From assembly GCF_002113885.1 (NCBI RefSeq), contig NW_018408800.1, positions 262,907 to 326,906 on the forward strand: DNA of 64,000 nt, given 5' to 3'. The first letter of the stretch is position 1. Every line of letters starts with the position of its first letter. The position numbers were made by a program, and so were the translations under genes. This DNA comes from Mizuhopecten yessoensis. Taxonomy: Eukaryota. Below, in pieces: positions 1 through 53,690 of the stretch. The notes under the pieces were generated by a model. The model made no database searches. It had not been told where the DNA came from and saw nothing but the letters and a program-made list of their open reading frames with translations.

Positions 1-77
1 CAGTTATGAAAAGTAATCACATTGTATATCTTTTCTTTTGAATAGTACATCCAAAGAACTTTAAGATGTTCACTTAC

Positions 78-3000
78 CACACACGCGACAAAGTAGTCCC
101 ATTTGTCCTCCAACTCGGCCTTTGTGAGGAGCTTTGTGTTAGCTGTAGACACTTTCTCCAGAATATCCAAGCACCTGCTTGAACCATACTTGTCTAGCTC
201 AGCTTTACTGAAACACAATTATCAACTTATCATGTATAACTTTGAACGAGGTCGTCGAATGAACCACAATATTATGTATAATTACATGTAATTCGAATAG
301 AAGAACTGTTTGTATTTTGAACAAAATTAAGAAATATTCATGCTCATAATCATGATTTTATATTGTAAGCATCCTGTCTGGGCTCGTACCTATGATGTGC
401 AAGGATTTGCGCCGACATCTGACTGACTGTAGAACTGCTGGTGGAGGATTGGAGACTTGCAGCGTCAGTAGAGTCGAATGAAGTGGCGTTCTTTCGTTGT
501 TCGTATAACGTCTTACTCTATACAAACGAAAATATGTTATACTCGTTCATTCTAAAACAATATTACGTGATCCTGATTTAGTTGAAGTCAATAACAATAC
601 TTCAACTGAAACGTATTCTTTGCTAATCTATCAAAAAAATTAGCAAATCAAGTTTATGCAGCAATGAAACAAAACATACCTTTAAATACACGCTTCAAAA
701 GGTTGATAAGAAGAAGAATTGTGAAAACATAAAAAATATCTCATTTTAATAAAGTTACTAAAGTACACTTTACAAATAAAAAAATAGCATTACCAGGCCT
801 CGTGTCAAGCATGGAGTTTCGCTGATTTTTGTGAGAACATCGAGGTAAGAACTGTCTTGCACGAAGTTGATAACATCTTCCTTACTAAAGCCACACGCAT
901 AAGGAAGAATATTTGTTACCCTCATCAGGGTAAAGTTGGTGTTGGTTGAAGTTACATCTCCGACAACAGTCTTCACTTTCTTCATCAGAAACCTTGCCTG
1001 AAGACATATTATGTATAATATGGTGTATCCAAGGTCGCAATGTAACGTTAAAACTGGTTCAAAACAGTTCTAAGGTGTTTCAGTTAAAACTGAAACACAT
1101 TTCCCTTTACCCTGTATTATACACGACTTTGAACTAATGATTCTAATAATTATATAACCCATTAATCTTATTCTATACCGACATAACTTTATCATACATA
1201 TTTAGTTTCTCGTACAAACATGATTTTCAGTACTGTTATAGCTGTTTTAAACGTACATAACATATATTATTTCATATCTGTCATGCATATATTCCCGTTT
1301 TAATTGTTAAACCATATATTGTCTTCACCATATACTATCTCTAGGAGCATCAAAACCCATATTCCATCTTATGCTTAAACAATACATTTTCATGTAGAAT
1401 TTTTCTCATAAAAACAAACCTGCTTTGTGTTACATTCAATGGAACTTTCATTGGTTTCTCCGACCAGGTCGTCAAAATCCGATACAGAGGCCTCCTCTAG
1501 GTCTGATATGGGAATCTCCTTGGCGAGAGAAGTTTCCAAAACTTTTCCAAGACCAGCACCACTCTTCATCTGCATAATCAATATGGAAACCTTTATTTTG
1601 ATACCAAGCTCTTTTGAATAACACGGGTATCCTCAATTATCTTGCTGTTAAATTCAACCACCGAACGATCAGTGGTTCTATATAACCTTAAAGGCCTGGT
1701 ATAGCATAAGAGGCAGTTAAAAAGTTAGTTGGTATTGTAAAACCTAGTAGTACGAGAAATAAAGAATACAGAACGAAAAATATTCTGTAAATTATATGTA
1801 TTTTGTTCCTCAAGACGGTGTTATTCTAACGAAAGTATACTGACTACCGGAATATTTTGCCTAGTCATTTGTTTACCTTTTGTCCTGTTAAACTGATATG
1901 CGCTCTGAGTTAATTTTTACGCTAATGACGAAAACAAGTATATTTATCTAGCTTTATACTTTATACTAATAAATGAACTGTTTAAAAAAACCTTATATAC
2001 AATAATATAACCAGGTATACAGTATATCGTCATTTCAAAATACCATTATTTTCCAATTAAAATCTAATCTTTTCATTCTTTTAAGTTAAAGAATGCCCAA
2101 CGGTATTTTTGAACATTGCAAAACACTTATGGAGAGGTTGATCAGTCGAGTGCTTACCTTTTGGATGAACTTTGCTTTGACGGCTTTAGATATTTGCATT
2201 TCTCCACTCTTGAGAGCAGTGTCCAGAGAGGCTACCACACTGTCGGTAAATGAGGCATCTGGTACATTAATCACCTCTGTAGCTTTCAATGCTAACACCG
2301 ATGAACCCATCTTCTCAAGGTCATCGCTGCTGAAGTCTCCCTTTTCAAGTAAAACATCAGTATTAATAGGCGTGGTCATACCATTTTAATAGTAATTGTC
2401 CATATTTTAGCAAGACTATCCTGTGGATTTGCACAAAAGTAGCCAAACCTACTACCAACATTTTATGATTGGTTGCTTTCGTGTTGGTGAAACAGCAGAA
2501 ATGTTTTAAGATGATACGTATATATCTCATAAAATAATTACCTATTATGAAAGGAATGTTAAAAACGAGGTTTACACATATTTTGTATTACTCTTAGTGC
2601 GGAAGAAGAGAGAAGGACTGTTAAGTGACATATCACTAAAGAATACGAAGAAACGAAGCTTCAGACTTAACTTCTTCGGTTTCATTTGTTGAGGATGATC
2701 AAAAACTATTCATGTTCTTTAAAAAGTATTTAAGTAAAAAGAATGGATAATCTTACTTACATTTGGTTTGTTGAAAGCCGTCTTTGCCATTGTCATTATT
2801 GAGCGAGCCTATTTAAGGTAAAACAAGATATTGCATTTGAGGGGATCATACATGAATAATGAAAAAACAGAAATTTAAACAAATTACTGTTTTAAAAAAG
2901 TAGATATAGAAACCGTTAGGTATATTTTATACACTGTTCATGAATTCTCTAATGAAATGGTATGTGAAGTCTTCATTATTGCGTTTATCTCTACCGTAAA

Positions 3001-6000
3001 TTGGAAAGTATAACGTGCTAACTAGCAACCTTATTGAACTATGCGTCTTTATCAATCGTGGTAGGTACCTTTGACCTAGATTTCAAAGTCATGTTTTTGA
3101 TGTCTCCCGAAGTAAGAGCTCCTTGCATAGCTGCAGGTGGCACCTGGTCAAATGCTGCTTTAGGAAAGAAAGGCAGCATGCAACCGATACATTCCAGTTT
3201 GCTGGCGTCAAAGGTTGTTGGGTCGGTGAATGTTGGCAGCTTACGTTGTATAACCTCGGTGATCATTCTCAACTAAAATAAAATACAAGTAGAGTTAGCT
3301 ATGATTACTTCACATTCCACATCAAGTAAGATCTATAAGTAGGAAATCAAAAACCATGAACGTGTTATCGAGTAAATCCTGTTTTTTAGTTCCATGGAAA
3401 AAGAATATTAAACATTTTACAGTACGTTTTTATCTGCGTCATGATGCTTTACTTTTACTTTGATGTCTTCTCATCGCTGTAAGTGTCTTATCTTGTCTTC
3501 TTTTAGTGCCTTTACTTTCTCAAAACCTTTTATTTCATCCAAATATTTTCAAATTTATCTTAATTAACAAGAAGCATAAATTTAAACGAAAATGTAAGAA
3601 TAAGAAAACATTATTTAGCATATCCTTTGCAAATGACATTAAAAACTTACGTCTGCTTTTCCTAGATCTGATGCTTTTTTACATATGTCACATGCAGCCA
3701 GTTCTAACGCTGTCGCATTTAACTCCATCATTCGGGTTTTATTAAACGCAAGAACCTTGATAAAGCTGAAATTATTTATAACATATATAAAATATAATAT
3801 CAAACTTCAAATATCTAATGTAACAAATGTACAACAATACACAAAATACATACAAAATGTGAAGAAATACAACCAATAAACCAATTGAAGATAAAAAAAT
3901 TAAATATGCAAGGGCGTTGAGAACCCATAAAAAAGGAAAGCACAATTTCTATTCATGTAAGAAATAAATTGTCAAAATAAATCAACGGAATATGTTTTAA
4001 GAACTTACTTAACAATTTGGTCTTTGTCCATGACAGTTACATCTAGAGACTTGCTGTTCTTCTCCATGTATTTCATTGCATCCTTAGGGTCAGTCTTACT
4101 CATGTCCACTGATGACATTGCCTATCAAAGTATGAAACAAGTATTTAAAGATGGTACACATATGTCACACTTTTACAGAACGGATTAGACAAAAGACAAT
4201 AGAACCGATACAAAAAGTAAGTGACAAATCGTAACAAATCGTATTAAACTGTTATTGATCGTTAGTAAGTAGATATCGTAAGTTAAATTGAAACTGAAAT
4301 AACATGCCCAGAACCACATCACAGTACTCGGCCTGGTCATACTATAATGACAAAGGGCTCCCAAGTCGTGTGGTTACCCCAAATGCTGAACGTTTAGCAG
4401 AGAGTAACAACTACCCTTTTATGGAAGTTTCTATAGTAAATCCTGTAAATAAGAGTAATCAAAACTTCTTAAAAATAAAAAAATGGTACAATTATGTGTA
4501 CATGGGCAATAAAACCATGCTATAAAAGCACAGAAGAAGCTTAATTTGCATTTAAATGAAAACGTTTTAAATCCGTCGAAAACATTTCTGGTTGTTAGAG
4601 TTTTTTTTAAAAAAATAATCAGTACCTCCTGAACGTCCAATACACCGTCAAAAAAGTTCGGACTTGCACCGCATTTACTTAAAAGGTCCATCCAATCAGA
4701 TTTAATGTTGGCAGGAATGGTCGCCTGTGATTTCATCGCCACCAATTTGTCCTGTGTCCGTTTGGCAATAGTTTGCACTACTTTTACCGACAGCTTTCCA
4801 CAAAAAGGCATCAAAGTCTTCATGCTGTCAACCAATTTAAACCTTGGTATGCATTGTATGAACAAAACTAACATTAGAAAGCAATGAGTTCGTGTCATGG
4901 TTACTGTGTTTCAATACATTATCGGATCAATTCATTATGTATCGGAGCGAAACGCTTCATGTAATTAATTAACTAATAATTAATTACAACATTGATAATC
5001 CTTCTAATTTGTAAATAATTATGGTAGATGATATCAAAATTATTTCCATATATTGTCATATATTTCTGTTTGCCTTATTATCTTAATATACAGTCACAAC
5101 CACTTGTATAAGGTGGTCTTTTACAAGCGCGTGACATATTAAATAATCTTACTTGTCGATAAGAACATCGATGGGTACGCTCTCAAAATGTGTATATGTC
5201 AAAAGTTCAGCGAAGTACGATAGAGTTTTGTTCCACTCGGCGTCGTCCCAGTTTGTGAAGTTGGTAAGATCAACAAGTGCTAATAGGTCTGTCTTAGATA
5301 GACCCTGGCCTCCACCCTGCTGTAAGTATATACACCTCTAATTTATTTTGCTTTACCTGAAGAAACATTTAGTAAGAATCGTTGCTCTTCAATAACGAAC
5401 TACTTTAATTGTTTGATAAATAGACACAACCAAAAATATGACAATAACAAGTTTTAAGAATACTTGTCAATAAAATAACACTTTCACGAAAAACGTTTTC
5501 AAATACCCATGCACAATTTCAATCGTCAACGTGTTTCATATACTGCATGTATGAGTCAAATTATCATTATTTTGTGAATAATTATGAGCTCGAAAATTGT
5601 AAATCATTGTTGTGATGTCTATTTCCCCTGTCATATGTACCAAAAAGACACCCGGTGATACGCGTTATGACGAGAAAATCGACATCGTTACTTGGTCTAA
5701 ATGTCACCTTTCACAGTTGTGTTAAATATCCCTTCACAAGTCATTTCATTTAAATACTTAATTATTAGAGATGACAAAAATACAAAAAAATGTTAATTAT
5801 ATGATATTTATGTTGAATATTTATGCCCTTGAAGAAAACGTATTTGCCAATCACCCGCTGACGTTACAGTAAAATAGCAATAGAGCTTTACAAATTGTAA
5901 TCCAAAAATGCAACATAAAAAGCACAATTGTGCATATTGTGTGTAGAAGGATAACAATAACTTTACCAGCAATATAGTTGAACAGTCGAGGTTCCTGAGG

Positions 6001-9000
6001 ATTGCCGCGCGAACCAGACAGTCAACAGACTTCAGCTTGTCACAGACCAGTTCTTTCTGTGCCTGGTTCATGGTGCTGAATACTACTTTCTCCAGGTTGG
6101 ACTGCCAATGTTAAAAATCAAAATCACATTATTGATTTAAGCACTATATTTATAATGTGACATTTCCGTATGGTAAACATTATAGAGATATTGTCAACAA
6201 TAACATTACTATCAATTTGGTACAATTTTATTAAGTTTTCGCCAGACATACATTTCCGGGTCAAACGAACTATTTGAGCAATATTTTTATTTTACTTTAT
6301 TTATTTCCTGATTTTCCCCCAGGAAACACTTATCTATTGGTTTTGTTAATGCTTGTTTTTACTTTCGCAGTTATTTAACTCATAATTGATTCGCAGGGAT
6401 TTCAATTTCAAACAACAAACATATCGGTTACAGAAACTGTGTCTAGCATGTTTTTGCGTAATATTTAAAGTTTTCACCGTCTAATAACTGTAACTACACA
6501 CTCGAATTTCCCCCAGCATGACTATAGCTTTAATAAATCAGTCCTGAAAAGCAAACCATACCTTGTTGGAATTTTGTTGGAAAAAAATAAAAGTGAAATA
6601 AAAAAAAACGTAATCAACAACAGTGTTTTGAGTGTAAAAATTCAGAGGCCAGACCGGATTTGAAACCTGGACCTCAGATTTGATATTGTCGCTCTAACCG
6701 ATTGAACTGCCTAGTCAATGTATATAATTGGACTTTACTCTCGCATGTTTTCACGAAAGTTAACCAATTTTTCTTATCGATACACACGGAGGTTATCCAT
6801 AATTTTAAGAAGATGGCATTGTACCGTTACTTTTATTACTTTAACTTGCTATAACAAATGTTGTGGCAAATAAAACTTGGAAATGATGTCCTAATTCTAA
6901 TTATAAATAAATTGATCAAATTTTTTAAATTGTCCGGTTTCCCCTTAAATATTTAATATTCTTTATTTATTTGTTGCTATTAAAAGTTTCAAGAAAAACA
7001 TCAAGTACATTGACTTCACAAGAAATGATGCGTTTGATTTGGGTTATAAAGTAATGTGTTTTTACTTTAAAGTACCTATTTTCCACAAGCGCTATACCTG
7101 TAACGAGGCGTATATTTCCTTTGGGAATGTGGCCATGTCGCGTGCTGTGACAGAAGTGGTGTCGTTGAGGAACTCCTTTATCTTCTGTTTAGTCCTTGGT
7201 GACAGCTTTGCCCATATTGTCATGTAGGACGTTAAGCCTTCACAGGACGCCATCTTTGCATTCACAATAAAAGCTGCAATATTGCGAAAACATTATGCAT
7301 AGCATAGCATTTGGGTATAAATGATCATGTATTTTGTATACATAAAGAGCAAAAACAATGTTCGAAATTATAAATAGGTTGTTTGTGATTCCTTAAACTA
7401 TATGTTTTAAGTCGTAAATCAAATTTACTTACTTTTCATATCTGATGTTTCATTATAAGCCTCAACAAGGTTCCGTGGAAGGGATGACAAAAACCTCTGC
7501 TTTATTTGTCCATACTGATCATATGCCATACAGGTAGACGACTTTACGAAGGATTGGCAGTAGCTACATTCCTTTGGACAGCTGTAAGACACGACTGAGC
7601 CTACACTTGGTTGCACTGGAGGACGAGTTGCAGGACGTGATACAGAAGGCCTGTTTCCAGAGGTAGTACGGTTGTTTGTCGGAACAGTCGGCCTGTTAGC
7701 ACCAGTTGGACGGTTGTTTGGTTGAACAGTCGGTCTGTTTACACCGTTGGTGCCGTTGTTTGGTTGAACTGATGATGTGTTTACACCAGTTGGACGGTTG
7801 TTAGGTTGCACAGACGGCCGACTGGCACCAGTGGGCCTATTTGCACCAGTAGGGCGGTTGTTAGGTTGCACAGACGGTCTGTTTACACCGGTAGTGCGGT
7901 TGTTTGGTTGAACTGTCGGTCTGTTTACACCAGTTGGACGGTTGTTAGGTTGCACAGACGGCCGACTGGCACCAGTTGGCCTATTTGCACCAGTAGGGCC
8001 GTTGTTAGGTTGAACAGTCGGTCTGCTTGCACCAGTGGGTCTGTTTGCACCAGTAGGGCGGTTGTTTGACTGAACAGACGGCCTGCTTGCACCAGTTGGT
8101 CTGTTTGCACCTGTAGTGCGGTTGTTTGGCTGAACAGTTGGCCTGTTTGCACCGGTAGGACGGTTGTTTGACTGAGTTGTTCCTTTCGTTCCCTGCTGCT
8201 TTTGTTGTGACGTTACTTTCGTTCCTTGCTGCTTTAGTTGTGAGGATCCTAATTCTATCATAATAAATGTATTCCTTTACAAGGGAAATAATTGGATATA
8301 AAATGAATGAAAGTCATGAATATTAATCTTTTGTAATATATTCTCTTTTGTTTTACGGAGACCAAGCTAAATTTGATTATAATAAATCAATCACAATGTT
8401 AATACATAGGGAATGATACATAGTCGTGTAACTCTTTTGTTTTGTTTTAACAAAAATAAACTTACCTGGAACTGTCAGGAGTACTGCAAAAGAAACAACA
8501 GGTTCATAGTATGAGCAGATAAAACAATTGCCTTGTGTAACCACAAAGTTAAACCTGTTATCATCGGTATATATTTCTTTCGATATTTGGCTAATATATA
8601 GTTTTACACATTTCAGTACGATGAGAGATTGATATGATGTCCGAACCACACTCAACCGTCTGCAATTATAGTTGTGCTGGCAGAAAAACATTAATAACGT
8701 GGTCCTTGTTTGGAAACATTATCATCGTTCCTGTGTCATAGCTGTACGTTGGAATATGTATTGAAAACAGCTGGCAGATCAGACGTTTACCTAGGCGTTA
8801 CGATTTTGAAACAATTATATCGTTCACTTATTGTTTTCATATCTTATATTATAAAAGATAATAAAAAATATGGTATATATTGTATTTGGTTTGTGTTGAC
8901 CATGGACCCTCCTTGATAGCATTTTTTTGGACGTCACTGTGACTTCATTACCACCTTTGTTATTTAAGTTTCTACTATAATGAGATGGGTTTAAAGTGAT

Positions 9001-12000: not shown

Positions 12001-12119
12001 GGAAACTTTTCCTTAATTCTTTCAAATCAGTAAAACAATATTTGAAAATAAATCGCTATAAATTATAAGATGCATTTGCACTTACCAGTAACAAACAGAA
12101 GGAGATACAAGCACTTCAT
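78..12119 (-). CDS. Gene A: otoancorin/stereocilin/mesothelin-family secreted protein, 3'-partial (continues past position 1); 16 exons in window
   Basis: Exons (minus, GT-AG, phase-consistent): 12086-12119, 8466-8483, 7433-8248, 7098-7273, 5967-6101, 5153-5316 (or 5319, NAGNAG), 4626-4824, 4009-4121, 3651-3765, 3069-3272, 2761-2808, 2158-2340, 1420-1569, 794-997, 390-517, 78-207. The N-terminus MKCLYLLLFVTVLLTVPG looks like a signal peptide. Each exon has a homologous exon of the same or similar size in gene B. Family assignment is by paralogy to B. Confidence 0.85.
7433..8248 (-). CDS. Gene A exon 3: low-complexity Pro/Asn/Thr/Arg repeat (RPTGAN / RPSVQPNN) followed by the Cys motif YSCPKECSYC
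   Basis: ORF 7425-8261. Phase-1 acceptor at 8249-8250 and donor GTAAGT after 7433. The Cys motif matches gene B (YKCPKSCVYC). Confidence 0.85.
9950..10985 (+). mobile_element. Old SINE-like dispersed repeat split by the HINE insertion
   Basis: 9970-10075 joined to 10933-10980 aligns with the reverse complement of ~61875-62035. Confidence 0.55.
10076..10932 (+). mobile_element. Non-autonomous Helentron/HINE-like element (gene A intron 1)
   Basis: 5' TTAGCACACCTG with sub-terminal inverted partner CAGGTGAGCG (~10899-10908), 3' hairpin GGCCC-TCT-GGGCC then CTTGT, CCGT-like microsatellite near the 5' end, and an internal ~300-bp duplication (~10190-10460 vs ~10490-10765). This matches my recollection of bivalve HINEs. 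Confidence 0.7.
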
Positions 12120-12138
12120 CTTGACCAGCAGTTGATGT

Positions 12139-12159
12139 ATCCCCGACCAGCGGGGACTT
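12139..12159 (-). promoter_or_regulatory. Conserved hairpin/palindrome 20 nt upstream of gene A ATG
   Basis: Minus strand reads AAG-TCCCCG-CTGGT-CGGGGA-T; counterpart upstream of gene B. Confidence 0.55.
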
Positions 12160-16214: not shown

Positions 16215-16239
16215 TGAATTTCCGTTTAGCAATACACTC

Positions 16240-43500: not shown

Positions 43501-46500
43501 AGAATGAACAAGACCATTCACACACACATGCTAGAATAAAATAGTTGTGTCACCCTTTAGAATGAACTAGGTATATGATACAAATGTGATAGAATGAAAT
43601 ATGCAAATGACATGTGTTGGAATCACGTACATGGTACATCTAATAAGCACATGTGTTAAATTTAATAACTATACCACACACCTATGATCAAGAACGAACT
43701 AGTCCTATCACATGCGCATGTGTTAGAAGGATATATGCCTATCACAAACACGTGATAAACTAATATTTAGTTGAAAGACTGTTCATCGGCACAATGATTC
43801 GTTCAGTTGGTACACGATTACGAATTTATATCACAATTTGAATATACATTTGCATCTGGTGAAAACACTACAGCCATTGAAATCGTTTGAGTTGAAATGA
43901 ATGTAATTCTAAATCGACCACAACATATTTAAAGCAGCTTTTTTTTTTTACAACAGGATAAACATTTCAATTGTAAACCTTTACACAGACGGACATAGTG
44001 TTATTTATTGTTACAAGTATATACACAGTTACATCCTGTTATAACAAAATGGATACCAACAAAGTTCTTGACTGGACTGTTACCGGTATGGATAACAAAA
44101 TGGTTTATACAAAATACAAATTTAGTGTAAGATTCGAACGCAACCCTACTAAAGTGTAAATCACCTCAAAAGTGTTTACGTCTCTCGTTTTACATCAAAA
44201 CATCATATGTGACGTAAATCAGCTTTCTCTTAAAAGCAATATTTGATATCTTGCTTCAACAAAAATAACAACGGATTCAAGTACTTACACGTTGATTTAG
44301 TCTTCCTAAGTAAGATCAATTTGACGTTAAGTTTAGCTATCCGATTGAGAAATAGCTAAGTCATTTAGCAGTCTCATATTAAATAAAAGAATAATGTTTG
44401 TAAGAAGGATACATGATAGCGTATTCTGCACATGATGCTTATAACATGTCAAGCTCATTTGATCTGTTTATACAAGTTACAGGAACGTCATATTATTATT
44501 TTTTATGTTTTCGACTGGCCCTTACCATCATGATGTAAGACAGGCGTGAATTGCAACAGCTAACAAAAGGGGAAAGAATAGCTCCACAGGATATCTGTAT
44601 ATAAATGAACATCAGATAAGTAGCAATTTCCTATCATTCTGTTTGGTTACAAAAGATTGACATGTTATAATATCAGTAAACTATTTTTATGAAGGCATCG
44701 GCCATAATTTCTCATTGCAGACTAAGCAATATTCGTTCTGTATTATCTTAATGAACAGGGCCCAGTTGTTCAAAAGAGGATTAGCTTAATAACTGTTTAA
44801 CGACATTTTTTGATAAGAACGCAGCACACATATTGTATCACGTCACGCTTAAACACATAACCGTTATATCAAATTCATAACAAAGTGGAATGTTAAAACA
44901 AGCATTGTTATGAGGTCCCAGCGGGAGGCACTACTTAGTATATCTCATAGACTCAAATGAAAAGCACACCTGCATATGCACACACACACGCGTTCACATG
45001 CAACAAGAAGTATGATGCAGGCCGTTACTCAACTTTACACGTGTACATAAGTAATTATTTCATTTCGTATTGCTCAAATTAAATACATTTTATTCAGTAT
45101 TGTTCACATTTTATCAAAAGCTGAAAGAATTTATATTTGCATTTTTCTGTAACTTTTCTTAATGAAACGCTTTCTTAATTATGTATTATATTCAGATTGA
45201 ATTGAAAATGAAATGCATGCTCAATATCGCGCTGCTACTATGTTTTTGTTAAATATGGTTGAAGACATCACTTGGGAGATGAAATTAGCTGTTCTTATAA
45301 TTCTTGTAAAACTCACATTCTAAGTTTGATAATAATTTAATTTTCTATCATTTCCCGATAACACAACTGTCTTCAGAATTTAACTTACTCCAAACATCTA
45401 ATATCTTACTTTCAAATTCAGTTTTCATAATTCAAAATACATCAAAAATATAAATTGAAATAATACGTAGTCGTGTTTAAAAAATAACATGATTTTTCTT
45501 GTACACTTATGATTGGTATCCTTAAGTCTTACTTCTATTTGCGCTCGTTTGCCATGGTACTATGTCTGCTTTCCATTAAAACAAATATTAATAAACCGAA
45601 GTAATTAAAGTCATAAATTACCTTCTAAAAATCCGTTAAAATATCATTTATTTTCCTCAACAATATAGTACTTATTTAGCTTTATTAAGTGTTGATTCAC
45701 ATCTTTAAACACTAAGTGTAAAATTGCGTCTCATAAAGCGAAATACAGTAAAAACATCAATCATGTCATATTTATTACTGTATACTATAATTGATTTATG
45801 AAAAATTAAACAGTTTATGCAAAAACTAATAACTAAACCATCTAGTATAATTTGATATATAACCAACAGAGGTCATTGTTTTTAGTGCCTCCGCTAGGGG
45901 TCGAATCTGGAACCTCTGGTTTAATACAAAAGGAATGTTAGAGCATTCTTCCTAATCGAGAAGGTGGAAAACAGCTAGAAGTTTACCAAGGTGAAATATG
46001 ACATTGTAAAACATCGATAATTGATTGAATTCAGCTTGTAAACAAGCATTAAAGTTCTTTTTCTAAAAGCGGATTCTAAAATAACATGTTTACGCAATCG
46101 ATATATAAATAAACATGGTAATCTTGCTAGTAAAATACATGTGCTAGATAAAAGTTACATACATATTGATGCAATCGACATATATACAATGTAAGGTTAT
46201 ATCACAGTTTAACAGTTATCTTAGTTAAGAGTATCATAGAATGCATAAAGTTTCATGCAAAGATATTTCATCAATTAAATGGCATGTGCCTAATATACAT
46301 ACATGCTAATATAGCAAACAATAAAAATTGACATAGTTATATGCTAATATAGCATAATCTAAAATATTGATTTAATTATTTAATTAACTATCAGTCCTTT
46401 TTCCAAAACTTATTTGAAATACACTCCACTGAAAAATGTGAAACACAATCTTATCTTCGCCATGTTACAATACATATTTTAATTTCGCTCTGACAAATAA

Positions 46501-48270
46501 TAAAATACATACCTTGGACACCAAGCACCACTGCAAGGAAAAAACAGTATTTGATTCACTCAGTTATTTTAGCGTATTCGCAACCAATTAGTATTTTCTC
46601 CTTGAGCTTATTTATATCATTAAATGTCAATAATCCGTGCCAGTTAACAGACGAAGAGAACATTATGTGAATCGAAAAAGACAAGGCAATCACTGATACC
46701 GATAGTTTCGAAAGGAAATGTCCCTGAAGTTGAGAATGTGAAATGATCTACTTACAATGGTCACCTTAAAATTACGTTTGTTTTCATGTGTGCAGTGGGT
46801 AAATCTTTGTGAAATACAAGTCCACTCAGAAAAGAGAAGTCATATATATAAACTATTGTTTACCCGGTGTTACTATAATTTACACTACGGTAATGGAATG
46901 CCCGATACGCAATACGGAAATGACGACAGGAAAATACGACAAGAAAAACATGTGTATTACGAAGGGTGGAAAGTCCTGAAGATATGGTTGTTAACAACTG
47001 CAAATTTTGGAAATAATTTTGATTGTTTTGCTTTTCATTTAGTAAAAACCTGAAATGCTATTTTGCTTCAAAACTCTTTAATTGTTTTTAATCAAAACCT
47101 CTATCATCTTTTCTCACTATCTTGTATTTACCCCTTTGTATATATTGACACGGACTTAGATAGCAAGGACTTAGTCTAATCTAATTCCGTGATATTGATA
47201 TCAAGTTTTATAGAAACAAATGTATTTAAGATGACGCCATTATGGAGAAAACATAAATGTAACAAAAACCAATCATTACATCATTACATATACTAGGAAT
47301 TGAACTAGGCAGGGTCCAAACACGACATATTTTGAATAGTGGTCAATGATGTCAAAGGGGCGATTAGTCCTTACGACTAAATTACGTTTCAGTACAAGCT
47401 TTGTTAAAGGCTGTTATTGTAACGGCGTATTGCTCATTTAACGGTTGAATCTTGCCTCTGTTGATCTCATGATGCATTGAGTTTGTCTTAAGAATGGAAT
47501 TAAAAAATAATAAACTCTTTTTCCTCGAAAGATTATTCAATGGCCCTGTGTAATATAATTCATCTATTATATACCTAAGTCTAGGTGATAATACGTTTCT
47601 CGCCGAGAGAGTGAGTCGAGTATACATAATTATGTGTTTTTTTTGTCAGAACTACATCCTCGATATCCAGGGGTTATGCTCACTAAAAAAAAGTGACCAA
47701 TCGCTAGGCTGTCCTTTGAAGATTACAAAGGAGCTACACTCGACTTCAAAGCCTGTCGAGTTTTACCGACCGCGAGATTCGTTTGATGTACATCAAAGGA
47801 TCGAACTGGTCTTCTTGTCTCATCAACAACGTGGCGCACACTGAGCCTTCAATTTGGCTATGGCATATTCCAGGGGTGCAGAGAGCGAAAGTGAGCATAA
47901 CCCCTGGATATCGAGGATGTAAAAACTAAGGGAACCCTTTGAAGTCGAAGCACGGTCAAGCTACTTCATCATCAAATGTTTTTCACCACCTTTGGTATCT
48001 TAAAAATAATGAAATTGCTACTTTTGGCTAATAGGTAAAAATGTGTTATTCTTCTTTAAAACTGAGAATTAGAAAACTAGTTAAAAGAACACTTTTTCTT
48101 AACACGACCAAGAGTATTAACTTATTTCAAGCTCAGTCAAGCCTCTACCGTCTCCCCCTCCTTGTATTAGACAATACTAAACGTTATTGGTACGAAGACT
48201 TTTATTTAATAAAGCAAATTAATACAATTAACTTACCTCCGTAAAGGAGAGCACAACAAAACCACGCCAT
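19581..48270 (-). CDS. Gene B: otoancorin-like (OTOA/STRC/MSLN family) GPI-anchored glycoprotein, 26 exons, ~1175 aa if the short exon 3 is used
   Basis: Exons: 48237-48270, 46513-46530, 41186-41338 (long form to 42934 has stops), 39761-39936, 37980-38114, 37628-37791, 36842-37034, 35573-35685, 34133-34235, 32750-32947, 32417-32461, 30068-30250, 29586-29735, 28081-28263, 27706-27833, 26982-27111, 26548-26744, 25293-25380, 24847-25060, 24389-24570, 23675-23827, 23332-23477, 22386-22528, 21854-21951, 20505-20631, 19581-19654. Sum is 3528 nt, in frame to TAG. Signal peptide MAWFCCALLYGVVLGVQ. C-terminal motifs resemble the otoancorin/stereocilin family: LTCSNIQ..QLSSLADQEFTSCIETLG, LGAPSTWS, LRSLGHITCG, AYGSDVTTW..NIGITIGGL, IPPATFAGFTVEQ. 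Hydrophobic tail DNGAGTVTSSVMLALVLSLAVVYQ*. Confidence 0.85.
20057..20359 (-). mobile_element. tRNA-derived SINE in the last intron of gene B
   Basis: Minus strand: GGCAGTCTAGTGGT (A box), GGTTCGAGTC (B box), central TTGAGCAAG..CAGCTGTAAATGAGTAC, LINE-like tail ending in (TTA)n. Confidence 0.75.
20729..21410. mobile_element. Possible degraded hAT-like MITE
   Basis: Starts TAGGGTTG, with clusters of AACCG(A/T)T sub-terminal motifs at both ends; the right TIR is degraded. Confidence 0.35.
25620..26165 (-). repeat. Dispersed repeat, copy 2, inverted relative to copy 1 (gene B intron 17)
   Basis: TTGAAAATCCAATGTAGGGAGACAGT ... TTCAGGAAACCGGCTACC ... CACAATCCTATTAC. Confidence 0.8.
28641..29025 (+). 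repeat. 55-bp minisatellite, 7 copies (gene B intron 13)
   Basis: Unit CTCCTGATGTGTGACTTCATTACCTAGCTTCTAATATTGAAAGTCTATTTCCTAG. Confidence 0.95.
30400..32230 (+). repeat. 36-bp minisatellite, ~45 regular plus ~5 divergent copies (gene B intron 11)
   Basis: Unit GAACACATGTTTCCAGTGTCGGACGCTATCAACTCA; explains the repetitive ORFs on both strands. Confidence 0.95.
41420..42790 (-). repeat. 60/69-bp tandem repeat encoding (PPKTKGGHEHSQD[CSN]MSPSYDR)n; disrupted or intronised part of gene B exon 3
   Basis: ORFs 42579-43004, 41670-42563 and 41103-41477 share one frame, separated by TGA at 42579-81, 41670-72 and 41496-98. A 198-bp higher-order period is visible (42271 vs 42469). Confidence 0.85.
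43350..43770 (+). repeat. Highly degenerate ~30-bp tandem repeat
   Basis: Recurrent ACAC(A/G)TGT..TAGAATGAAC..GTC motif. Confidence 0.4.
47655..47919. mobile_element. MITE with perfect 30-bp terminal inverted repeats and TA target-site duplication (gene B intron 1)
   Basis: TA-CATCCTCGATATCCAGGGGTTATGCTCACT at the left end and AGTGAGCATAACCCCTGGATATCGAGGATG-TA at the right end; no coding capacity. Confidence 0.85.
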
Positions 48271-48280
48271 TGTGTAATTA

Positions 48281-48301
48281 ATCCCTGACCAGCAGGGACT
48301 T
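48281..48301 (-). promoter_or_regulatory. Conserved hairpin/palindrome 11 nt upstream of gene B ATG
   Basis: Minus strand reads AAG-TCCCTG-CTGGT-CAGGGA-T; compensatory C-G vs T-A difference relative to gene A. A TATA-like TTATAATTATA lies just upstream (~48314-48324). Confidence 0.55.
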
Positions 48302-51300
48302 TTTCAGTTCACATATAATTATAAGCAACGGAAACTTTGTTCATATCCAACAACGCAAAAGACACTGCGCATTATTATGATATTATTACCTATTTATATG
48401 AGCGTAAATATTGGGATAAAGCCAGTTACCATAAACGGAGCTTGATCTGATTGCATGATTGCAACAGGTAAATCTACACCGTTTGGCGACATTGTTTTGT
48501 GGAAAAATCGTGACTTATAGTCAAATGTAAATGACAGATACACATCAGACTAGCGTATGTTTTAATGCGAAGGACCATTACTAGCAGATCGTATGTCATT
48601 CGTTATTATCATTTAAAAAGTCAAGTAATATATCTAGTCAACAGGTCGAGCAGATATCAACTGAACCACCTCCTTATCTTCAATATTGACGCTTTACAAA
48701 CGATATCAAACGAATAACGAACGGACGGTCTTCCGAACAGACAGCCTTCCGAATGTCAAGTGACCGATTTGATAGAGAGAAATTGAAGTTAGTCCCGTTG
48801 TAGACTGACACAGCAGAAATTTACCATGCATGCGTTTAAAGTATGCACTGAGAGTATTCCTATTTAGGGCACTCCGGAAAAGGACAAATTCTGATTAATT
48901 TGAAACTAACTAGTTAATGATAAACTCTTTCTTCATGGAGAGGATATTTCTGGGACAAATTTACATGCTTTGTTGAGAAACATATAACATATGCTATATA
49001 TATTTTTGTGTCGGAAAGGTCCATTTTACATAGAAAAATACTGAACAGTTCAAATCAAGCTCTCATTTATCTCGTACATAGAACTATTTGTAGAATTACA
49101 TGGAATAAACTGGTAGAGTTTAATCAATTATATATATCTCAAAGTCGTCTCGAACATTGTATATATAGAAAAAAAACTGGTAGCCTATCATAAATACACG
49201 GCAAAGATAATTTGTACATAATCAAGCCAAAAGAGTTAAACAATATACCTGTCGAAACTGTCCCGTATCTTAACACAGAACAAGCGTTTAGCTGATATGT
49301 ATGTATATATTTATAGGTCGCTAACATGGAACTTCGATGCAGTGTTGTCATGCATTGAGGCGTAAACTGATATGAATGGACACTAGTATATCTAATACCA
49401 CTAACTGGTTTACGCCAAGTACCTACTTGTATGTGTTTAATACACGATCTTAAAATGAGTTGTCAACTCAAAACTTATAACCGTGTGAGATTTAATACTC
49501 AGCAAATATCGAAATTATACCGAAACTAACAAATTATGTAAACTTAATAAAAAAATAAACTGTGTTTCTTTTATATTTGTATCCATATAGTTTCCTTAGT
49601 ATATAGTTGTGTATTAATTTGTAACAATCAGTATTTCAAATACCGCATGCACAAATACATATTTGGTTTTAAGTACACATCATGTCCATTGAATGTTAAA
49701 AACATGTTGAGAGAATTATCGACAGCTGAAAAAGTTCAAATTAAAGTCAGGCGCGGGACATCAAACATTACGAGTACTTGTGTGAGCATGGTGCAATTCA
49801 CATTCGAAAACTTTCATAGAATATATGTTTTGTGCATAGCGTTTAAAAATTGTCATATGTATCAATTGAAACCTTTACATAAAGTAACGTTGATAGGCGG
49901 TGAAAAATTGCAGTCAATCACACAAGTGTCCATCTGTTCTATATAGCACGTAACTGTTATATGTTGGGGAAATTGATTGTGTACTTTTGTTTGTTAAACT
50001 TGTATATTATCGACTGTATCAGTTGAAATTGGAGTTTTTTTTGTACATTTCAGTGTTAATCAAACAGCTGGATGTATTACTTTTCCCACATGACGGGATT
50101 AATATGTATAACGGCTTTATCAACACCGTATGTCGGAAAGCGCTGCTACTCTTTCATCGTCGTCTTTTAAATTCATTACAGGTTTCACATTAATTATTCG
50201 AAAAAAAGCTATATAGACGCATCGCTAAATTTATAAGAAATTGACATATGTGTCGATCAGTTCAAAAATATAGTGATCTATTAGCATTAAATGAGGCCAG
50301 ACCAGACCAGAACAAAACTGACAGAACCATGTTTTATTGTATGTCGAAAGTTTTCGTCTTATACATTAATTTACACAACTCATATTCTCTACGTCCTATA
50401 TGTCAGCACCTCTTAGTTTGCTTTGCTCAAGTTACTTTCCATTTACGAAGCTCCTGGTGTATTTATTGCGAGGAATTTACATAACTCTTGCTTTGTCTCC
50501 TATTCATATCGTATACATTTAGCGATAGGGATGGTATCATATAAATATATTAAATATAACAAAGTTTCAAATGAAAATTTTGCTCCATAACCTGAGGTTA
50601 ATTGTATTACTCGTTTCATGTATATCTTTTCACAACATCTTGTGGATCCTTCAACTTAGATTCAAGGAGATTGAAAGTACATGTATGCTGTTAATTGTGC
50701 CAACCTTGAATATCCCTCGTATTCAAAAACAATATAACCACAATGTTTGTAAAATAACTGGTCAATTTATTCATAAAAATAGAGCAATTGTAATCCATTA
50801 AAATCATTTATGAAATCCCACACATATGATTCAGATGAGGTAAATGATAAAGATAGTAAGTAAACCATAACATTGATTGAATATATGAACGATTCATAAC
50901 GCTGTTAGACATTCTGGAAACAATATGAGAGTTGCTTCCCTTTGGCTCTGGCAGCTTTACTAGAAACGCCGTATGTTCAGATTATAGATTAATGCTAGCT
51001 GTAAAATCGTTTTGAATAGATTCTCTTAATCTTACTGATTTAAATAAACGGTCAATTTCATGGCAAAATGCTTGATAAATAATGAAATTTATTTAAAACT
51101 GAACCTCTATGCGTAAAAAGTTGCTATTATAACCCAAAAAATAAAATAATAACGAAACTAGTAATATCTATTCAAACATACATAAAGAAAACTAGTTTGA
51201 AACTTGGGCTAACGGAGCATGAGGCTTCTCGTCTATTCCAAACTAAATGGTAGCTACTTTACTGCGATGCTATAAATGTTGTATAGATAGTTGCATATGG

Positions 51301-52369
51301 TCAGCTTTCAGACAATACATTATATACAAACTCTGTTAATTGAATAACAGGAAATATACAAATGTATACAATTGTGATATAGTTAAATAACAGTGACAGG
51401 ACTGATATGATATGAATTGTAATTCTAATGAATGCACTGCTTTCTATGTTTTTGGAGTCTCAGAACAAGATACACACACGTGTATTATTTACATTTGCGC
51501 TGCAACCCACTATATGAACACTACCAGCAGAAATGCATTTCATTGAAGTATGAAAGCAGAAACCCCCACATGACGTGACACGTGATTTAATTATGACGTC
51601 ATACATTAACCTTAGTCAATGTGAGTCTTCGCTTCGGATAAAACATTGCGGGCTTCATGCAATATGGATGTAACCGTTTTGCGTTTATACCGGCATGAAA
51701 ATTTAAAAAACGCCGTTCAATTACTATATATATATTAAACGCTTGAGTTATGCTTAAATTCAGACCTCACGAGCGGTTGCATCTATATATTTTTGAGTTA
51801 AAAGCAGCACACATGCCGTATCATTGCAGCATAAAAGCGTTGCGGTGAGATTGGTACCAATAAAGAAATCAATGAGTGATATTTGAAATCGTATGCGTCC
51901 TTCTGAGTAACAGATGTCTGAATATAAATATACTGTACATACACTTATTTACATTGTATTAGTGTGTAGACTTGTCCTAGACAATAACATGCAGTCATAC
52001 CACCATAAACACTAGCATTTTTATATTCGGCAGAATGATAAACTTGCATAAGTAGTATCTTCAAAATAATGTACAGGGTCATCACATATATGCTCTTTCG
52101 TAACTTCTCTCCTTCGATTTTTTTATCATTAGTAAAGAGCGAGCATTACTATTTAATAATACTGATGCTCAAATAGTTTCATGAAATACAGTCCGTCATT
52201 AATTGGCAAAGATAGAACAACATATATTGTTGCGTGTTATCAAATCCGATTAGTAATGGTTAAAACCGTTGGTATTTTATGTTCTTTTACACAAGGCAAT
52301 GCATTGATCACAAGCACTTATTCCTACGGAGCTTAACCCCTAGCACAAAGGGAAGTCGAACCCGAATGT

Positions 52370-53690
52370 TCAAAGATGAGTGTCCAGCAAAGCTGTAGGA
52401 CTGTCAAGTGCTTGTTTTCTCTTTTTAATTGCTTCTTTAAGTTTTCTCTGAGGCCCAAGCCGAAGGCCTAACCTTGTGAAGTCCTCGTCAGTTAATAGCA
52501 TTAATGCCTCCAAGTCCGTGTCCTCGTTCGTAAAAATGTGCGTATAGTTACTGAGTCCACAAGATTCTAAGAACCGAACTAAGGGAGAAAACTCGGATTG
52601 GTCTTCGTCGTCATCACTGAGAATGTCGTCCTCGTCCTTCCAGGGTACCGGGCCTTGAAGACGTTCCTCTAAACTCGTTGTAGTACCGATACTGTCGGAC
52701 CCTGTGCTGTTCCGGTTACTTCCCTTTTCTGGGTTATCAATGTCGTCATCAATTTCATCCAGGTAGTCGTATGAAGACGCTTTTGAAAACCCGTTGAGGG
52801 TTCCAGTTAGACCTTGACGTGTGTGTAGAAACGACAACGTCCCCAGAGCGTTCTTAAACATTCCAGGAGTGTCAGCCTCGTCTTCGTTACCGTGTGTCGA
52901 ATCGATGGACCCGGTACCTGAGTCAAATAGATCAGACTCGCTTTTCCACTTGTTTTGTTTTGGAAGAGTAAACACATTTGTCAAAGCTGGCCTGCTTCCA
53001 GAGGCAGTTGTACTACTTTCGGAGTCTTTATTTGTGAGATACATAACATCCGAATTCTTTCGGAAGCCATTTGTACCTTTCATAGACCTCAGGGTTCTAT
53101 TCCCATCACCGTCAAACTCGCTAGTTTTAAAATCCATCACTGATTGCGTATCAAAACCATTCATTTGTTTTTGTAATATTTTCTTTTTCGTTCCTCTTGA
53201 CTTTGTCCCGATAGCTATGTCAGAAAATGTCTGCACACTTCTTTGACCATTTCCTGTGTAGTTCCGATTATTTGACTTGAACTTCATTGTCAAAGTCTTA
53301 AACACATTCATTTTTGTTGGAGGTCTGAAATCAGGATCGGTATGCTGTAATCGTTTTAAATCCTCCTTTTCAGCGATTTTCTGCGCTTCCTTGTTACGTT
53401 TTTCTTGCCGCTTTACGTTTCTGTCCGCGTCTTCGAAGGCTTTGGCGCTGAGTTTTTTGACAATGCTAGGATTAAGAGATTGTTGTTGGGCTTTAGCGTC
53501 GTCCAGTAACTTAACAATTTCCGTTTTGTCCCATAGAGCTGCTATGTCCTGAGCCGTCTTGTAGTCGTTGTCCATGGCCCATATGTTAGCGCCGTAGTTG
53601 ACGAGGAAGGAGGCAGCATTGATGTGACCACTCTTACATGCATGGTGAAGTGATGAATAGCCCATCAAATCCATCTTGTCGGGGTCACCC
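52370..53690 (-). CDS. USH1G: Usher syndrome type-1G protein (SANS)/ANKS4B homolog, large terminal coding exon; first exon not found in window
   Basis: Acceptor at 53691-92 immediately before GDPDK. Ankyrin repeats (SLHHACKSGHINAASFLVNYGANIWAMDNDYKTAQDIAA), QQSLNPSIVKKL, central motifs FKTSE..NSDVMYL, LGTLSF and DSIGTTTSL..VPW, SAM domain (SPLVRFLESCGL..DLEALMLLTDEDFTRLGLRLGPQRKL) and class-I PDZ ligand DTHL*. Probably co-orthologous to vertebrate USH1G and ANKS4B. Confidence 0.93.

What the first reader, a model, noticed from the sequence alone, without database searches (positions are those of the whole stretch)
78..53690. SANS/USH1G-like gene directly followed by tandem otoancorin/stereocilin-like genes: candidate invertebrate hair-bundle or microvillar gene cluster
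Seen: three co-oriented genes, with the SANS-like stop codon only ~4.1 kb upstream of gene B's ATG. Known: vertebrate USH1G (harmonin/MYO7A scaffold), OTOA and STRC are hair-cell deafness genes, and ANKS4B is the brush-border equivalent of USH1G. From memory, and needing verification, human ANKS4B and OTOA both lie at 16p12.2. Inference: this may be an ancient linkage or a co-regulated module pairing an intracellular scaffold with a GPI-anchored matrix tether, for example in statocyst, mantle or gill cells.
Basis: partly seen in the sequence, partly recalled or inferred. Interest (0 to 1): 0.75.

Follow-up and report, generated by a model that had tools for sequence, protein, structure and literature searches.

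The report
Scallop USH1G beside otoancorin-like gene pair
In the Yesso scallop, the gene for the hair-cell scaffold protein USH1G/SANS is followed by two tandem genes of the otoancorin/stereocilin/mesothelin family, but this tight neighbourhood was found only in scallops, so it looks like a local arrangement and not an ancient hair-bundle gene cluster.

Summary
On the minus strand lie the last exon of a USH1G/SANS orthologue (52370-53690; ANK, SAM, C-terminal DTHL), gene B (ATG 48270, stop 19584) and gene A (ATG 12119, running off the window start). The genome matches Mizuhopecten yessoensis, where gene B is already annotated "Stereocilin".

A and B belong to the stereocilin/otoancorin/mesothelin family:
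- Pfam Stereocilin scores just above its cut-off.
- BLASTP gives 5e-19 to lemur otoancorin and 3e-44 to amphioxus OTOA.
- The 284-residue module after a conserved RRRRR site models at pLDDT 95 and matches human mesothelin end to end (Z 12).
- Both proteins end in GPI-signal-like tails.

The cluster idea is only partly supported.
- Gene order USH1G then gene A is kept in Pecten maximus. The 50-kb gap could hold gene B, of which only an exon-1-like block was seen.
- No partner lies within 10 kb in Pinctada, Saccostrea, Crassostrea, Mytilus, Sinanodonta, Haliotis or amphioxus.
- In Pinctada the two genes are 68 Mb apart on one chromosome. In the annelid Owenia they share a chromosome but are apparently far apart.
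- The A/B duplication is scallop-specific, and a third paralogue lies on another contig.
- RNA reads cover USH1G but give zero reads on gene B exon 1.

Verdict: known gene families, probably a lineage-specific juxtaposition. Chromosome-scale linkage may be older.

The parts
52370..53690 (-). Last coding exon of the USH1G/SANS orthologue (about aa 57 to the end): last ANK repeats, central region, SAM domain, C-terminal PDZ-binding motif DTHL, stop codon
   Evidence: ORF. Pfam Ank_2 and SAM_1. 86% identity to Pecten maximus USH1G homologue. Splice junction at 53690/53691 seen in RNA reads. SAM-PBM aligns to ANKS4B 5f3x_B and USH1G 3k1r_B through the last residue.
50832..52369 (-). USH1G 3' UTR; transcript coverage ends near 50832
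   Evidence: RNA-seq depth and Logan contigs cover 50832-53691. There are no reads from 48000 to 50757 in run X21.
53691..64000 (-). Large USH1G intron, continuing beyond the window; coding exon 1 lies at about window 67288-67455
   Evidence: Exon 1 found at G000:C5473:330194-330361. Colinear conserved intronic blocks shared with the Pecten maximus USH1G locus.
48236..48270 (-). Gene B coding exon 1 (MAWFCCALLYG, start of a hydrophobic leader), followed by a GTAAGT donor
   Evidence: Sequence. An 85-nt block, 75% identical, lies about 5 kb downstream of USH1G in Pecten maximus. No RNA reads in the four runs laid.
19584..48270 (-). Gene B, otoancorin/stereocilin-like; annotated in M. yessoensis as 'Stereocilin' (P0102, an N-terminally truncated model)
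   Evidence: P0102 maps at 79-100% identity (most exons 94-100%) to about 22 exons from 39949 to 19584. Pfam Stereocilin 28.7 bits against a cut-off of 26.6. BLASTP to otoancorin 5e-19 and to amphioxus OTOA 3e-44.
41106..43016 (-). Gene B N-terminal low-complexity (His/Pro/Lys-rich) repeat region, followed by the Cys-containing block YKCPKSCVYC
   Evidence: Open frames. The block aligns with gene A at 7586-7491.
24845..25060 (-). Gene B exon ending in the polybasic site SRRRRRS, a candidate proprotein-convertase cleavage site
   Evidence: A dibasic motif at the same alignment column occurs in all mollusc, annelid and amphioxus homologues examined, and is absent from the two mammalian otoancorins.
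20506..24574 (-). Gene B exons encoding the 284-residue mesothelin-like C-terminal module (P0102:829-1112)
   Evidence: AF2 pLDDT 95.1. The top 8 Foldseek hits are human mesothelin. VIA-align Z 12.2, end to end.
19584..19658 (-). Gene B last exon: DNGAGTVTSSVMLALVLSLAVVYQ then stop, a GPI-attachment-signal-like tail
   Evidence: The pattern is small residues, a short spacer, and a hydrophobic stretch running to the C-terminus. No GPI predictor was available.
12087..12119 (-). Gene A coding exon 1 (MKCLYLLLFVT), followed by a GTAAGT donor
   Evidence: The region 12283-12082 is 76% identical to the start of the Pecten maximus gene A orthologue locus.
1..12119 (-). Gene A, otoancorin/stereocilin-like tandem paralogue. 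Only the N-terminal two thirds lie in the window (last complete exon 209-78); the gene continues to about 9.6 kb before the window start
   Evidence: Orthologues P0030 (Argopecten irradians) and P0099 (Pecten maximus) map at 76-97% identity exon by exon. The last exon lies at window -9484..-9564 with a GPI-like tail.
7428..8276 (-). Gene A N-terminal Pro/Asn/Thr/Arg-rich repeat exon, ending in YSCPKECSYC
   Evidence: ORF. Matches the repeats of P0030 and P0099.

Best explanation
The window holds three ordinary, separately transcribed protein-coding genes of the Yesso scallop. (1) The single invertebrate orthologue of vertebrate USH1G/SANS and ANKS4B is a cytoplasmic scaffold with ANK repeats, a central region, a SAM domain and a C-terminal PDZ-binding motif (DTHL). 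By homology it should dock a harmonin-type PDZ protein through SAM-PBM and a class VII myosin through its central region. (2, 3) Genes B and A are tandem paralogues of the stereocilin/otoancorin/mesothelin family. Each has a hydrophobic leader and a gene-specific low-complexity N-terminal repeat, then a roughly 800-residue all-alpha ARM-type superhelix and a conserved polybasic site. After that site come a 284-residue mesothelin-like module and a GPI-signal-like tail. Inferred mechanism: the proteins are secreted and probably cut by a furin-type convertase, as the mesothelin precursor is. The C-terminal module would stay GPI-anchored on the apical membrane and tether the cell surface, cilia or microvilli to an extracellular matrix, as otoancorin and stereocilin do. 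The tight USH1G-B-A arrangement is a scallop-lineage feature. The A/B duplication occurred within Pectinidae, and the adjacency was not found in the other molluscs or in amphioxus. At most the two families share an old chromosome-scale linkage. Shown: gene structures, family membership, fold, scallop-level synteny, absence of nearby partners elsewhere, and USH1G transcription without gene B exon 1. Inferred: cleavage, GPI anchoring, binding partners and tissue role.
For: USH1G identity: Pfam Ank and SAM; 86% identity to Pecten USH1G homologue and hundreds of USH1G-named relatives from arthropods to vertebrates; SAM-PBM aligns to the solved ANKS4B and USH1G harmonin-binding fragments. A/B family: gene B is the deposited 'Stereocilin [M. 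yessoensis]' protein on a 452,526-bp contig, the same length as the window's contig. Pfam Stereocilin scores above cut-off for P0102, P0030 and the Mytilus, Crassostrea, Owenia and amphioxus homologues. phmmer hits mammalian otoancorin at 8e-17; BLASTP gives 5e-19 and 3e-44. The full-length model is an all-alpha solenoid at pLDDT 82.6. The C-terminal module matches mesothelin at Foldseek E 3e-6 and VIA Z 12.2, against 6.1 for the best unrelated ARM protein. Synteny: in P. maximus, USH1G lies at 51.731-51.746 Mb and the gene A orthologue at 51.663-51.681 Mb, same strand and order, with a gene B exon-1-like block 5 kb after USH1G. Lineage specificity: in the tree, scallop A, B and C form one clade (100/100) and other bivalves have one co-orthologue. 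Pinctada USH1G is at 23.0 Mb and its OTOA-like gene at 91.1 Mb. No partner homology was found in the 10-kb flanks in S. echinata, Sinanodonta, C. angulata, M. galloprovincialis, H. rubra or B. lanceolatum. Separate transcription: run X21 has depth of about 15-20 over 50832-53691 and zero from 48000 to 50757, including gene B exon 1.
Against: The 10-kb flanks are short compared with scallop gene sizes, so partners at 10-500 kb would be missed. Only one OTOA-like paralogue per species was examined from the OTOA side. USH1G and an OTOA-like gene share a chromosome in Pinctada and in the annelid Owenia, and human OTOA lies at 16p12.2, where ANKS4B also lies according to memory. Some old linkage is therefore plausible. 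Expression was probed on a single short exon of gene B, in runs whose tissues are coded. Cleavage, GPI anchoring and the signal peptide are read from sequence patterns only. The exon 1 to exon 2 junctions of A and B were not resolved.
Confidence: 0.7

Rival explanations
1. Ancient conserved microsynteny. A USH1G/ANKS4B-type scaffold gene and an otoancorin-type gene were adjacent in the bilaterian ancestor. Scallops keep that state, and human ANKS4B-OTOA at 16p12.2 is its stretched remnant.
For: Adjacency is kept between two scallop genera. The genes share a chromosome in Pinctada and Owenia. OTOA is at 16p12.2 (PMC6770988). ANKS4B at 16p12.2, about 0.45 Mb away, is from memory and unverified.
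Against: It would need independent break-up in Pinctada (68 Mb apart), Saccostrea (different scaffolds), Haliotis rubra (5.79-Mb versus 1.49-Mb scaffolds) and Owenia (protein accessions about 1,900 apart). No partner lies within 10 kb in Crassostrea, Mytilus, Sinanodonta or amphioxus. The genes next to USH1G are products of a scallop-specific duplication.
Confidence: 0.1
2. Scallop-specific co-regulated module. The juxtaposition is derived, but it now places USH1G and the OTOA-like genes under shared regulatory control in a mechanosensory or brush-border-like cell type such as the statocyst, abdominal sense organ, gill or mantle.
For: Short intergenic distance: the USH1G transcript ends near 50832 and the gene B ATG is at 48270. 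All three genes have the same orientation. The order USH1G then gene A is kept between Mizuhopecten and Pecten. The vertebrate relatives act together in hair bundles (established knowledge).
Against: In RNA run X21, USH1G is covered at about 15-20x while gene B exon 1 and the whole intergenic region have zero reads. Fourteen RNA-like Logan runs hold about 0.48 of the sampled words, which equals the share that the USH1G part makes up in the one of them that was laid, X1. There is no read-through transcript. Conservation between two related scallops over this distance is also expected without selection.
Confidence: 0.15
3. A and/or B are decaying duplicates (pseudogenes), so the cluster is not functional.
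For: The deposited gene B model lacks the signal-peptide exon and the repeat exon. A simple acceptor at the start of gene A's repeat exon runs into a stop. Other first-stage notes suggest intronisation of the gene B repeat exon and a ghost paralogue.
Against: All homologous exons are open. Gene A is 76-97% identical, exon by exon, to full-length Argopecten and Pecten proteins. The gene B protein folds with high confidence. The conserved Cys, Trp and Gly columns of the family are kept.
Confidence: 0.05

Closest known systems
USH1G (SANS) / ANKS4B (Harp) scaffold proteins
   Same: Domain order is ANK repeats, central region, SAM, then a C-terminal class-I PDZ-binding motif. It is about 35% identical over 99% of its length to vertebrate USH1G. 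SAM-PBM aligns through the last residue with the solved harmonin-binding fragments of ANKS4B (5f3x_B) and USH1G (3k1r_B). The two-coding-exon structure is shared with other bivalves.
   Different: It is a single invertebrate gene, presumably co-orthologous to both vertebrate paralogues (inference). The tail is DTHL. Binding to harmonin or myosin VII was not tested.
Otoancorin (OTOA)
   Same: Otoancorin was the only vertebrate relative that the sequence search returned (8e-17). The match is 27% identity over 294 C-terminal residues, colinear and ending near the C-terminus. The match to amphioxus 'OTOA' is 26% over 790 residues. Size is similar, and the protein is predicted to be a GPI-anchored extracellular protein.
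   Different: The scallop proteins carry N-terminal low-complexity repeats and a conserved polybasic site that the two mammalian otoancorins lack. One-to-one orthology with OTOA, as opposed to STRC or MSLN, was not resolved, because no STRC or MSLN sequences were in the tree.
Mesothelin precursor (MPF + mesothelin)
   Same: The architecture has a polybasic (furin-type) site followed by a module of about 285 residues and a GPI signal. That module superposes end to end on crystal structures of mature mesothelin, residues 304-585 (Z 12.2; the 138-residue sub-fragment fits at rmsd 3.6 A, Z 9.2).
   Different: Sequence similarity is undetectable by profile search of the PDB. The scallop N-terminal part is about three times longer than MPF. 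The global rmsd is high (about 11-12 A), reflecting a different superhelical pitch or inaccuracy of the model.
Stereocilin (STRC)
   Same: The Pfam Stereocilin domain PF21058 is matched above the gathering score in the middle of the protein (P0102 residues 647-765). The M. yessoensis genome annotation already names gene B 'Stereocilin'. It shares the ARM-type superhelix predicted for this family (PMC2628672, listed).
   Different: The score is only marginally above cut-off (28.7 versus 26.6). No vertebrate STRC was retrieved by the searches. STRC is larger.

Membership tests
USH1G/SANS-ANKS4B | N-terminal ankyrin repeats | tested here: met
   Pfam Ank_2, Ank_4 and Ank hit residues 6-68 of the last-exon ORF. 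The first repeats are encoded by exon 1 outside the window, 91% identical to Pecten aa 1-56.
USH1G/SANS-ANKS4B | C-terminal SAM domain followed directly by a class-I PDZ-binding motif | tested here: met
   SAM_1 at E 5.8e-11, residues 371-429. The protein ends in DTHL. It aligns to the last residue with 5f3x_B (ANKS4B, 1.8e-14) and 3k1r_B (USH1G, 2.1e-11).
USH1G/SANS-ANKS4B | Central (CEN) region that binds the MyTH4-FERM of myosin VIIa/VIIb | tested here: inconclusive
   Conserved central blocks exist across protostome homologues (invariant and near-invariant columns of alignment A4).
USH1G/SANS-ANKS4B | Orthology: best relatives across phyla are USH1G | tested here: met
   290 proteins at E<=1e-10. 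The named ones are USH1G/Sans from molluscs, annelid, brachiopod, nemertean, arthropods, amphioxus and vertebrates. The rest of the genome holds only weak ANK-only matches, apart from a duplicate copy of exon 1 on the small contig C82309.
Stereocilin/otoancorin/mesothelin family | Significant sequence match to family profiles or members | tested here: met
   Gene B protein P0102: PF21058 at 28.7 bits (cut-off 26.6). Gene A orthologue P0030: 29.6 bits. phmmer to mammalian otoancorin 8e-17. BLASTP 5e-19 and 3e-44. Single exons alone do not reach significance; the best is E 0.074.
Stereocilin/otoancorin/mesothelin family | All-alpha ARM-type superhelical fold | tested here: met
   AF2 model of P0102: pLDDT 82.6, about 80 helices, no strands. 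The best full-length Foldseek matches are HEAT/ARM solenoids.
Stereocilin/otoancorin/mesothelin family | C-terminal module with the mesothelin fold | tested here: met
   P0102:829-1112 at pLDDT 95.1. The top 8 Foldseek hits are all human mesothelin, E 3e-6 to 3e-4. VIA Z is 12.2-9.2 over model 1-284 versus MSLN 304-585, and the next unrelated protein scores Z 6.1.
Stereocilin/otoancorin/mesothelin family | Secretory leader and C-terminal GPI-attachment signal (OTOA, MSLN) | tested here: inconclusive
   Hydrophobic starts are MAWFCCALLYG (B) and MKCLYLLLFVT (A). Both tails have small residues followed by a hydrophobic stretch running to the stop. No signal-peptide or GPI predictor was available, and the exon 1/2 junctions were not resolved.
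Mesothelin precursor | Furin-type cleavage site separating an N-terminal fragment from the GPI-anchored module | tested here: inconclusive
   SRRRRRS in gene B and R/K-R/K-R-S in all invertebrate homologues at one alignment column, absent from mammalian OTOA. Actual cleavage cannot be tested here.
Conserved USH1G-OTOA microsynteny block (proposed) | Adjacency present outside Pectinidae | tested here: not met
   No partner lies within 10 kb in Pinctada, S. echinata, Sinanodonta, C. angulata, M. galloprovincialis, H. rubra or B. lanceolatum. Pinctada genes are 68 Mb apart. Owenia genes share a chromosome, but their accessions are about 1,900 apart.

The most novel reading that the evidence does not exclude
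USH1G/ANKS4B-type and otoancorin-type genes belonged to one ancestral bilaterian linkage group and were once neighbours. Scallops would preserve that neighbourhood, and human ANKS4B-OTOA at 16p12.2 would be its relic, marking an ancient genomic pairing of the intracellular and extracellular parts of the apical-protrusion (hair-bundle or brush-border) apparatus.
Probability: 0.1. Interest if true: 0.55.

Novelty: new member of a known kind. Interest (0 to 1): 0.3.

Why it matters
Molluscs have a full-length otoancorin/mesothelin-type protein, with a conserved polybasic site and a GPI-like tail, and scallops have expanded it to three copies. This helps to date the deafness and cancer-antigen family (OTOA, STRC, MSLN) to before the bilaterian split. 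It also suggests that the precursor-cleavage architecture known from mesothelin is the ancestral state. The neighbourhood with USH1G would matter only if it were ancient or regulatory. The evidence here points to a scallop-specific juxtaposition, so it is a modest annotation-level result and not a new gene cluster.

Tried and rejected
- Exon-by-exon Pfam scans of 20 open frames gave only chance-level hits and one weak Stereocilin hit at E 0.074. Family assignment needed full-length database homologues.
- Profile searches of PDB sequences with alignments A2 and A3 found no mesothelin. They found only a designed repeat protein (HeliScrew4) and LRR proteins matching the short C-terminal LxxxQ repeats, which is a repeat artefact.
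- Foldseek with the whole 1137-residue model returned generic HEAT/ARM solenoids with TM of about 0.1-0.15. It became informative only after the C-terminal module was cut out.
- A look-up of the window's own USH1G product found no record. DNA for the Owenia locus was withheld.
- Paper searches found no article placing ANKS4B and OTOA together or placing ANKS4B at 16p12.2. A search of otoancorin/stereocilin together with mollusc and amphioxus terms listed no paper containing either protein name among the 15 shown.
- A words search of earlier scan findings gave nothing.
- I first read Ylistrum P0031 as a gene B orthologue on a different scaffold from USH1G. That reading was rejected: P0031 is the orthologue of a third M. 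yessoensis paralogue on contig C3616.
Deposited proteins (P0102 for B; P0030 and P0099 as proxies for A) were used instead, so M. yessoensis gene A itself is not in the tree or the models.
Full report
**Source and layout.** The window is G000:C5473:262907-326906 of a 987.6-Mb, 82,659-contig genome. The USH1G open frame is 86% identical to the Pecten maximus protein. A protein deposited as "Stereocilin [Mizuhopecten yessoensis]" (P0102) lies on a 452,526-bp contig, the same length as the window's contig. It maps at 79-100% identity, most exons 94-100%, to the window. The organism is therefore the Yesso scallop. The window has no N runs. All three genes are on the minus strand.

**USH1G/SANS.**
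- The open frame at 52370-53704 carries Pfam Ank and SAM domains and ends in DTHL.
- RNA reads and Logan contigs cover 50832-53691. They show a splice junction at 53690/53691 to an upstream exon encoding ..PALRLIVGR.
- That first coding exon (aa 1-56) lies about 3.3 kb beyond the window end. This matches the two-coding-exon structure of Pecten, Pinctada and Saccostrea.
- Relatives named USH1G/Sans are found from molluscs to vertebrates.
- The SAM-PBM aligns to its last residue with the solved harmonin-binding fragments of ANKS4B (5f3x_B) and USH1G (3k1r_B).
- It is a clear orthologue. By inference it is co-orthologous to both vertebrate paralogues.

**Genes B and A.**
- Gene B starts at ATG 48270 (MAWFCCALLYG, then a GTAAGT donor), exactly 4,100 nt after the USH1G stop.
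- P0102 matches about 22 exons from 39949 down to the stop at 19584.
- Gene A starts at ATG 12119. Its exons are defined by the orthologues P0030 (Argopecten irradians, misnamed "platelet binding protein GspB-like") and P0099 (Pecten maximus) at 76-97% identity.
- Gene A leaves the window after exon 209-78 and ends about 9.6 kb further on.
- A and B are colinear paralogues. They have diverged in the N-terminal half (27-48% identity) and are conserved in the C-terminal half (55-89%).
- The low-complexity N-terminal repeats are unrelated: Pro/Asn/Thr/Arg-rich in A and His/Pro/Lys-rich in B.
Deposited proteins were used instead.

**Family membership.**
- Single exons are too short for Pfam.
- A profile of one conserved exon from A and B, searched against 1.84 billion proteins, retrieved full-length homologues. 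They come from scallops, oysters, gastropods, the annelid Owenia and amphioxus "OTOA".
- Several homologues pass the Pfam Stereocilin gathering score. P0102 passes at 28.7 bits against 26.6.
- The C-terminal half of P0030 hits mammalian otoancorin at 8e-17 in a 5.8-billion-sequence search.
- P0102 aligns with lemur otoancorin (27% over 294 residues, E 5e-19) and with amphioxus OTOA (26% over 790 residues, E 3e-44).
- An AlphaFold model of P0102 is an all-alpha solenoid (pLDDT 82.6).
- A polybasic site, SRRRRRS in gene B, is conserved at one alignment column in all invertebrate homologues and is absent from mammalian otoancorin.
- The 284 residues after that site model at pLDDT 95.1. Their eight best Foldseek matches are all human mesothelin (E 3e-6 to 3e-4).
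- VIA-align gives Z 12.2-9.2 over the whole module against mesothelin residues 304-585, while the best unrelated ARM protein scores 6.1.
- Both genes end in a small-residue stretch followed by a hydrophobic tail, which looks like a GPI signal.
- The architecture therefore resembles a mesothelin precursor at otoancorin size. Cleavage and anchoring are inferred, not shown.

**Age of the duplication.**
- In a maximum-likelihood tree of the C-terminal 620 residues, the scallop proteins form one clade (100/100). It contains the gene A orthologues and a group of gene B plus Ylistrum P0031 and a transcript-derived protein (98/97).
- Oysters, Pinctada and Mytilus each contribute one co-orthologue.
- A third M. 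yessoensis paralogue lies at C3616:52370-70443 and is the orthologue of P0031.
- The tandem pair is thus a product of scallop-lineage duplication.

**Synteny.**
- In P. maximus, USH1G (51.731-51.746 Mb) and the gene A orthologue (51.663-51.681 Mb) lie in the same order and strand. The 50-kb gap could hold gene B.
- An 85-nt block resembling gene B exon 1 lies 5 kb after the Pecten USH1G stop. The middle 30 kb of the gap was not seen.

| Species | What was tested | Result |
|---|---|---|
| Pinctada imbricata | Both genes located; 10 kb around USH1G | Same chromosome, 68 Mb apart (23.0 vs 91.1 Mb); no family exon nearby |
| Saccostrea echinata | 10 kb around USH1G | No called gene or homologous exon; its OTOA-like genes are on other scaffolds |
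| Sinanodonta woodiana | 10 kb around USH1G | Nothing found |
| Crassostrea angulata | 10 kb around the OTOA-like gene | No USH1G |
| Mytilus galloprovincialis | 10 kb around the OTOA-like gene | No USH1G |
| Haliotis rubra | 10 kb around the OTOA-like gene | No USH1G; H. rubra USH1G is on a different scaffold |
| Branchiostoma lanceolatum | 10 kb around the OTOA-like gene | No USH1G; two OTOA-like genes lie tail to tail beside a PKD1-like gene |

- Human OTOA is at 16p12.2 (PMC6770988). ANKS4B at 16p12.2 is from my memory only, and no paper in the library confirmed it.
- Tight adjacency is therefore a scallop feature. Chromosome-scale linkage may be older but is weakly supported.

**Expression.**
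- In RNA-seq run X21, depth over the USH1G last exon and 3' UTR is about 15-20. It is zero from 48000 to 50757, which includes gene B exon 1.
- X23 and X24 have almost no reads anywhere on the stretch.
- The Logan contigs of X1 cover the USH1G part but not gene B exon 1.
- Fourteen RNA-like runs hold about 0.48 of the sampled words. In X1, the one of them that was laid, the USH1G part makes up that share.
- USH1G and gene B are therefore separate transcription units and are not obligately co-expressed. Tissues are coded, and only one short gene B exon was probed.

**Verdict.** Gene B's family was already recorded in the public annotation. The interpretation as an ancient or co-regulated hair-bundle cluster is not supported at the scale that could be tested. 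The most likely reading is a lineage-specific juxtaposition of a USH1G orthologue with a scallop-specific tandem pair of GPI-anchored otoancorin/mesothelin-type genes.

Noticed in passing
G000:C3616:52370-70443 (outside the window): A third otoancorin-like paralogue of M. yessoensis lies on another contig. It is the orthologue of Ylistrum balloti LOC132551390 (60-82% identity along the whole protein) and groups with gene B in the tree.
   Followed up: partly
G000 contigs C81759, C70820, C72839, C82110, C82309: Small contigs of 2-4 kb repeat exons of gene B, gene A, the third paralogue and USH1G exon 1 with the same scores as the main copies. They are probably uncollapsed haplotigs and inflate apparent copy number.
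   Followed up: no
window 24845-24870 (-), and the same alignment column in homologues: A polybasic R/K-R/K-R-S site just before a conserved 'LTC' cysteine is present in all mollusc, annelid and amphioxus homologues but not in the two mammalian otoancorins. This suggests that the mesothelin-type precursor cleavage is ancestral and was lost in OTOA.
   Followed up: partly
window 51486-51545: A short stretch inside the USH1G 3' UTR shows much higher contig depth (up to about 700), and reads and contigs run off into unrelated sequence in three runs. It is probably a dispersed repeat or transposon fragment embedded in the UTR.
   Followed up: no
window 30476-32233; 57014-57926; 16853-17020: Long minisatellite-like arrays produce spurious ORFs of 100-460 aa on both strands. 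They lie in a gene B intron, in the USH1G intron, and between genes B and A.
   Followed up: no
L013 (Branchiostoma lanceolatum OV696694.1:321941-372265): Amphioxus has two OTOA-like genes tail to tail, separated by a reverse-transcriptase ORF, with a PKD1-like polycystin gene immediately upstream.
   Followed up: no
window 8180-8330 and 12087-12119 (-): Gene A exon 1 ends in phase 1, but the obvious acceptor in front of the repeat exon (after TTGTAAAG) runs into a stop. The rest of the signal peptide seen in the Pecten and Argopecten proteins was not located, so an extra small exon or another acceptor is likely.
   Followed up: partly
window 12139-12160 and 48281-48300 (-): Nearly identical short inverted repeats (GTCCCCGCTGGTCGGGGAT and GTCCCTGCTGGTCAGGGAT) lie about 10-20 nt upstream of the ATGs of genes A and B. 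The duplication therefore included the 5' leader.
   Followed up: no
P0102 residues about 1040-1105 (window about 20506-21952): The C-terminal LxxxQ(I/L)xxL short repeats match a designed helical repeat protein (HeliScrew4, 9zem) and LRR proteins in sequence searches. This is a repeat-composition effect that can mislead annotation.
   Followed up: no
P0030 (Argopecten irradians XP_069122944.1): The gene A orthologue is named 'platelet binding protein GspB-like' in RefSeq, evidently because of its low-complexity repeat. That name is misleading for an otoancorin/stereocilin-family protein.
   Followed up: partly
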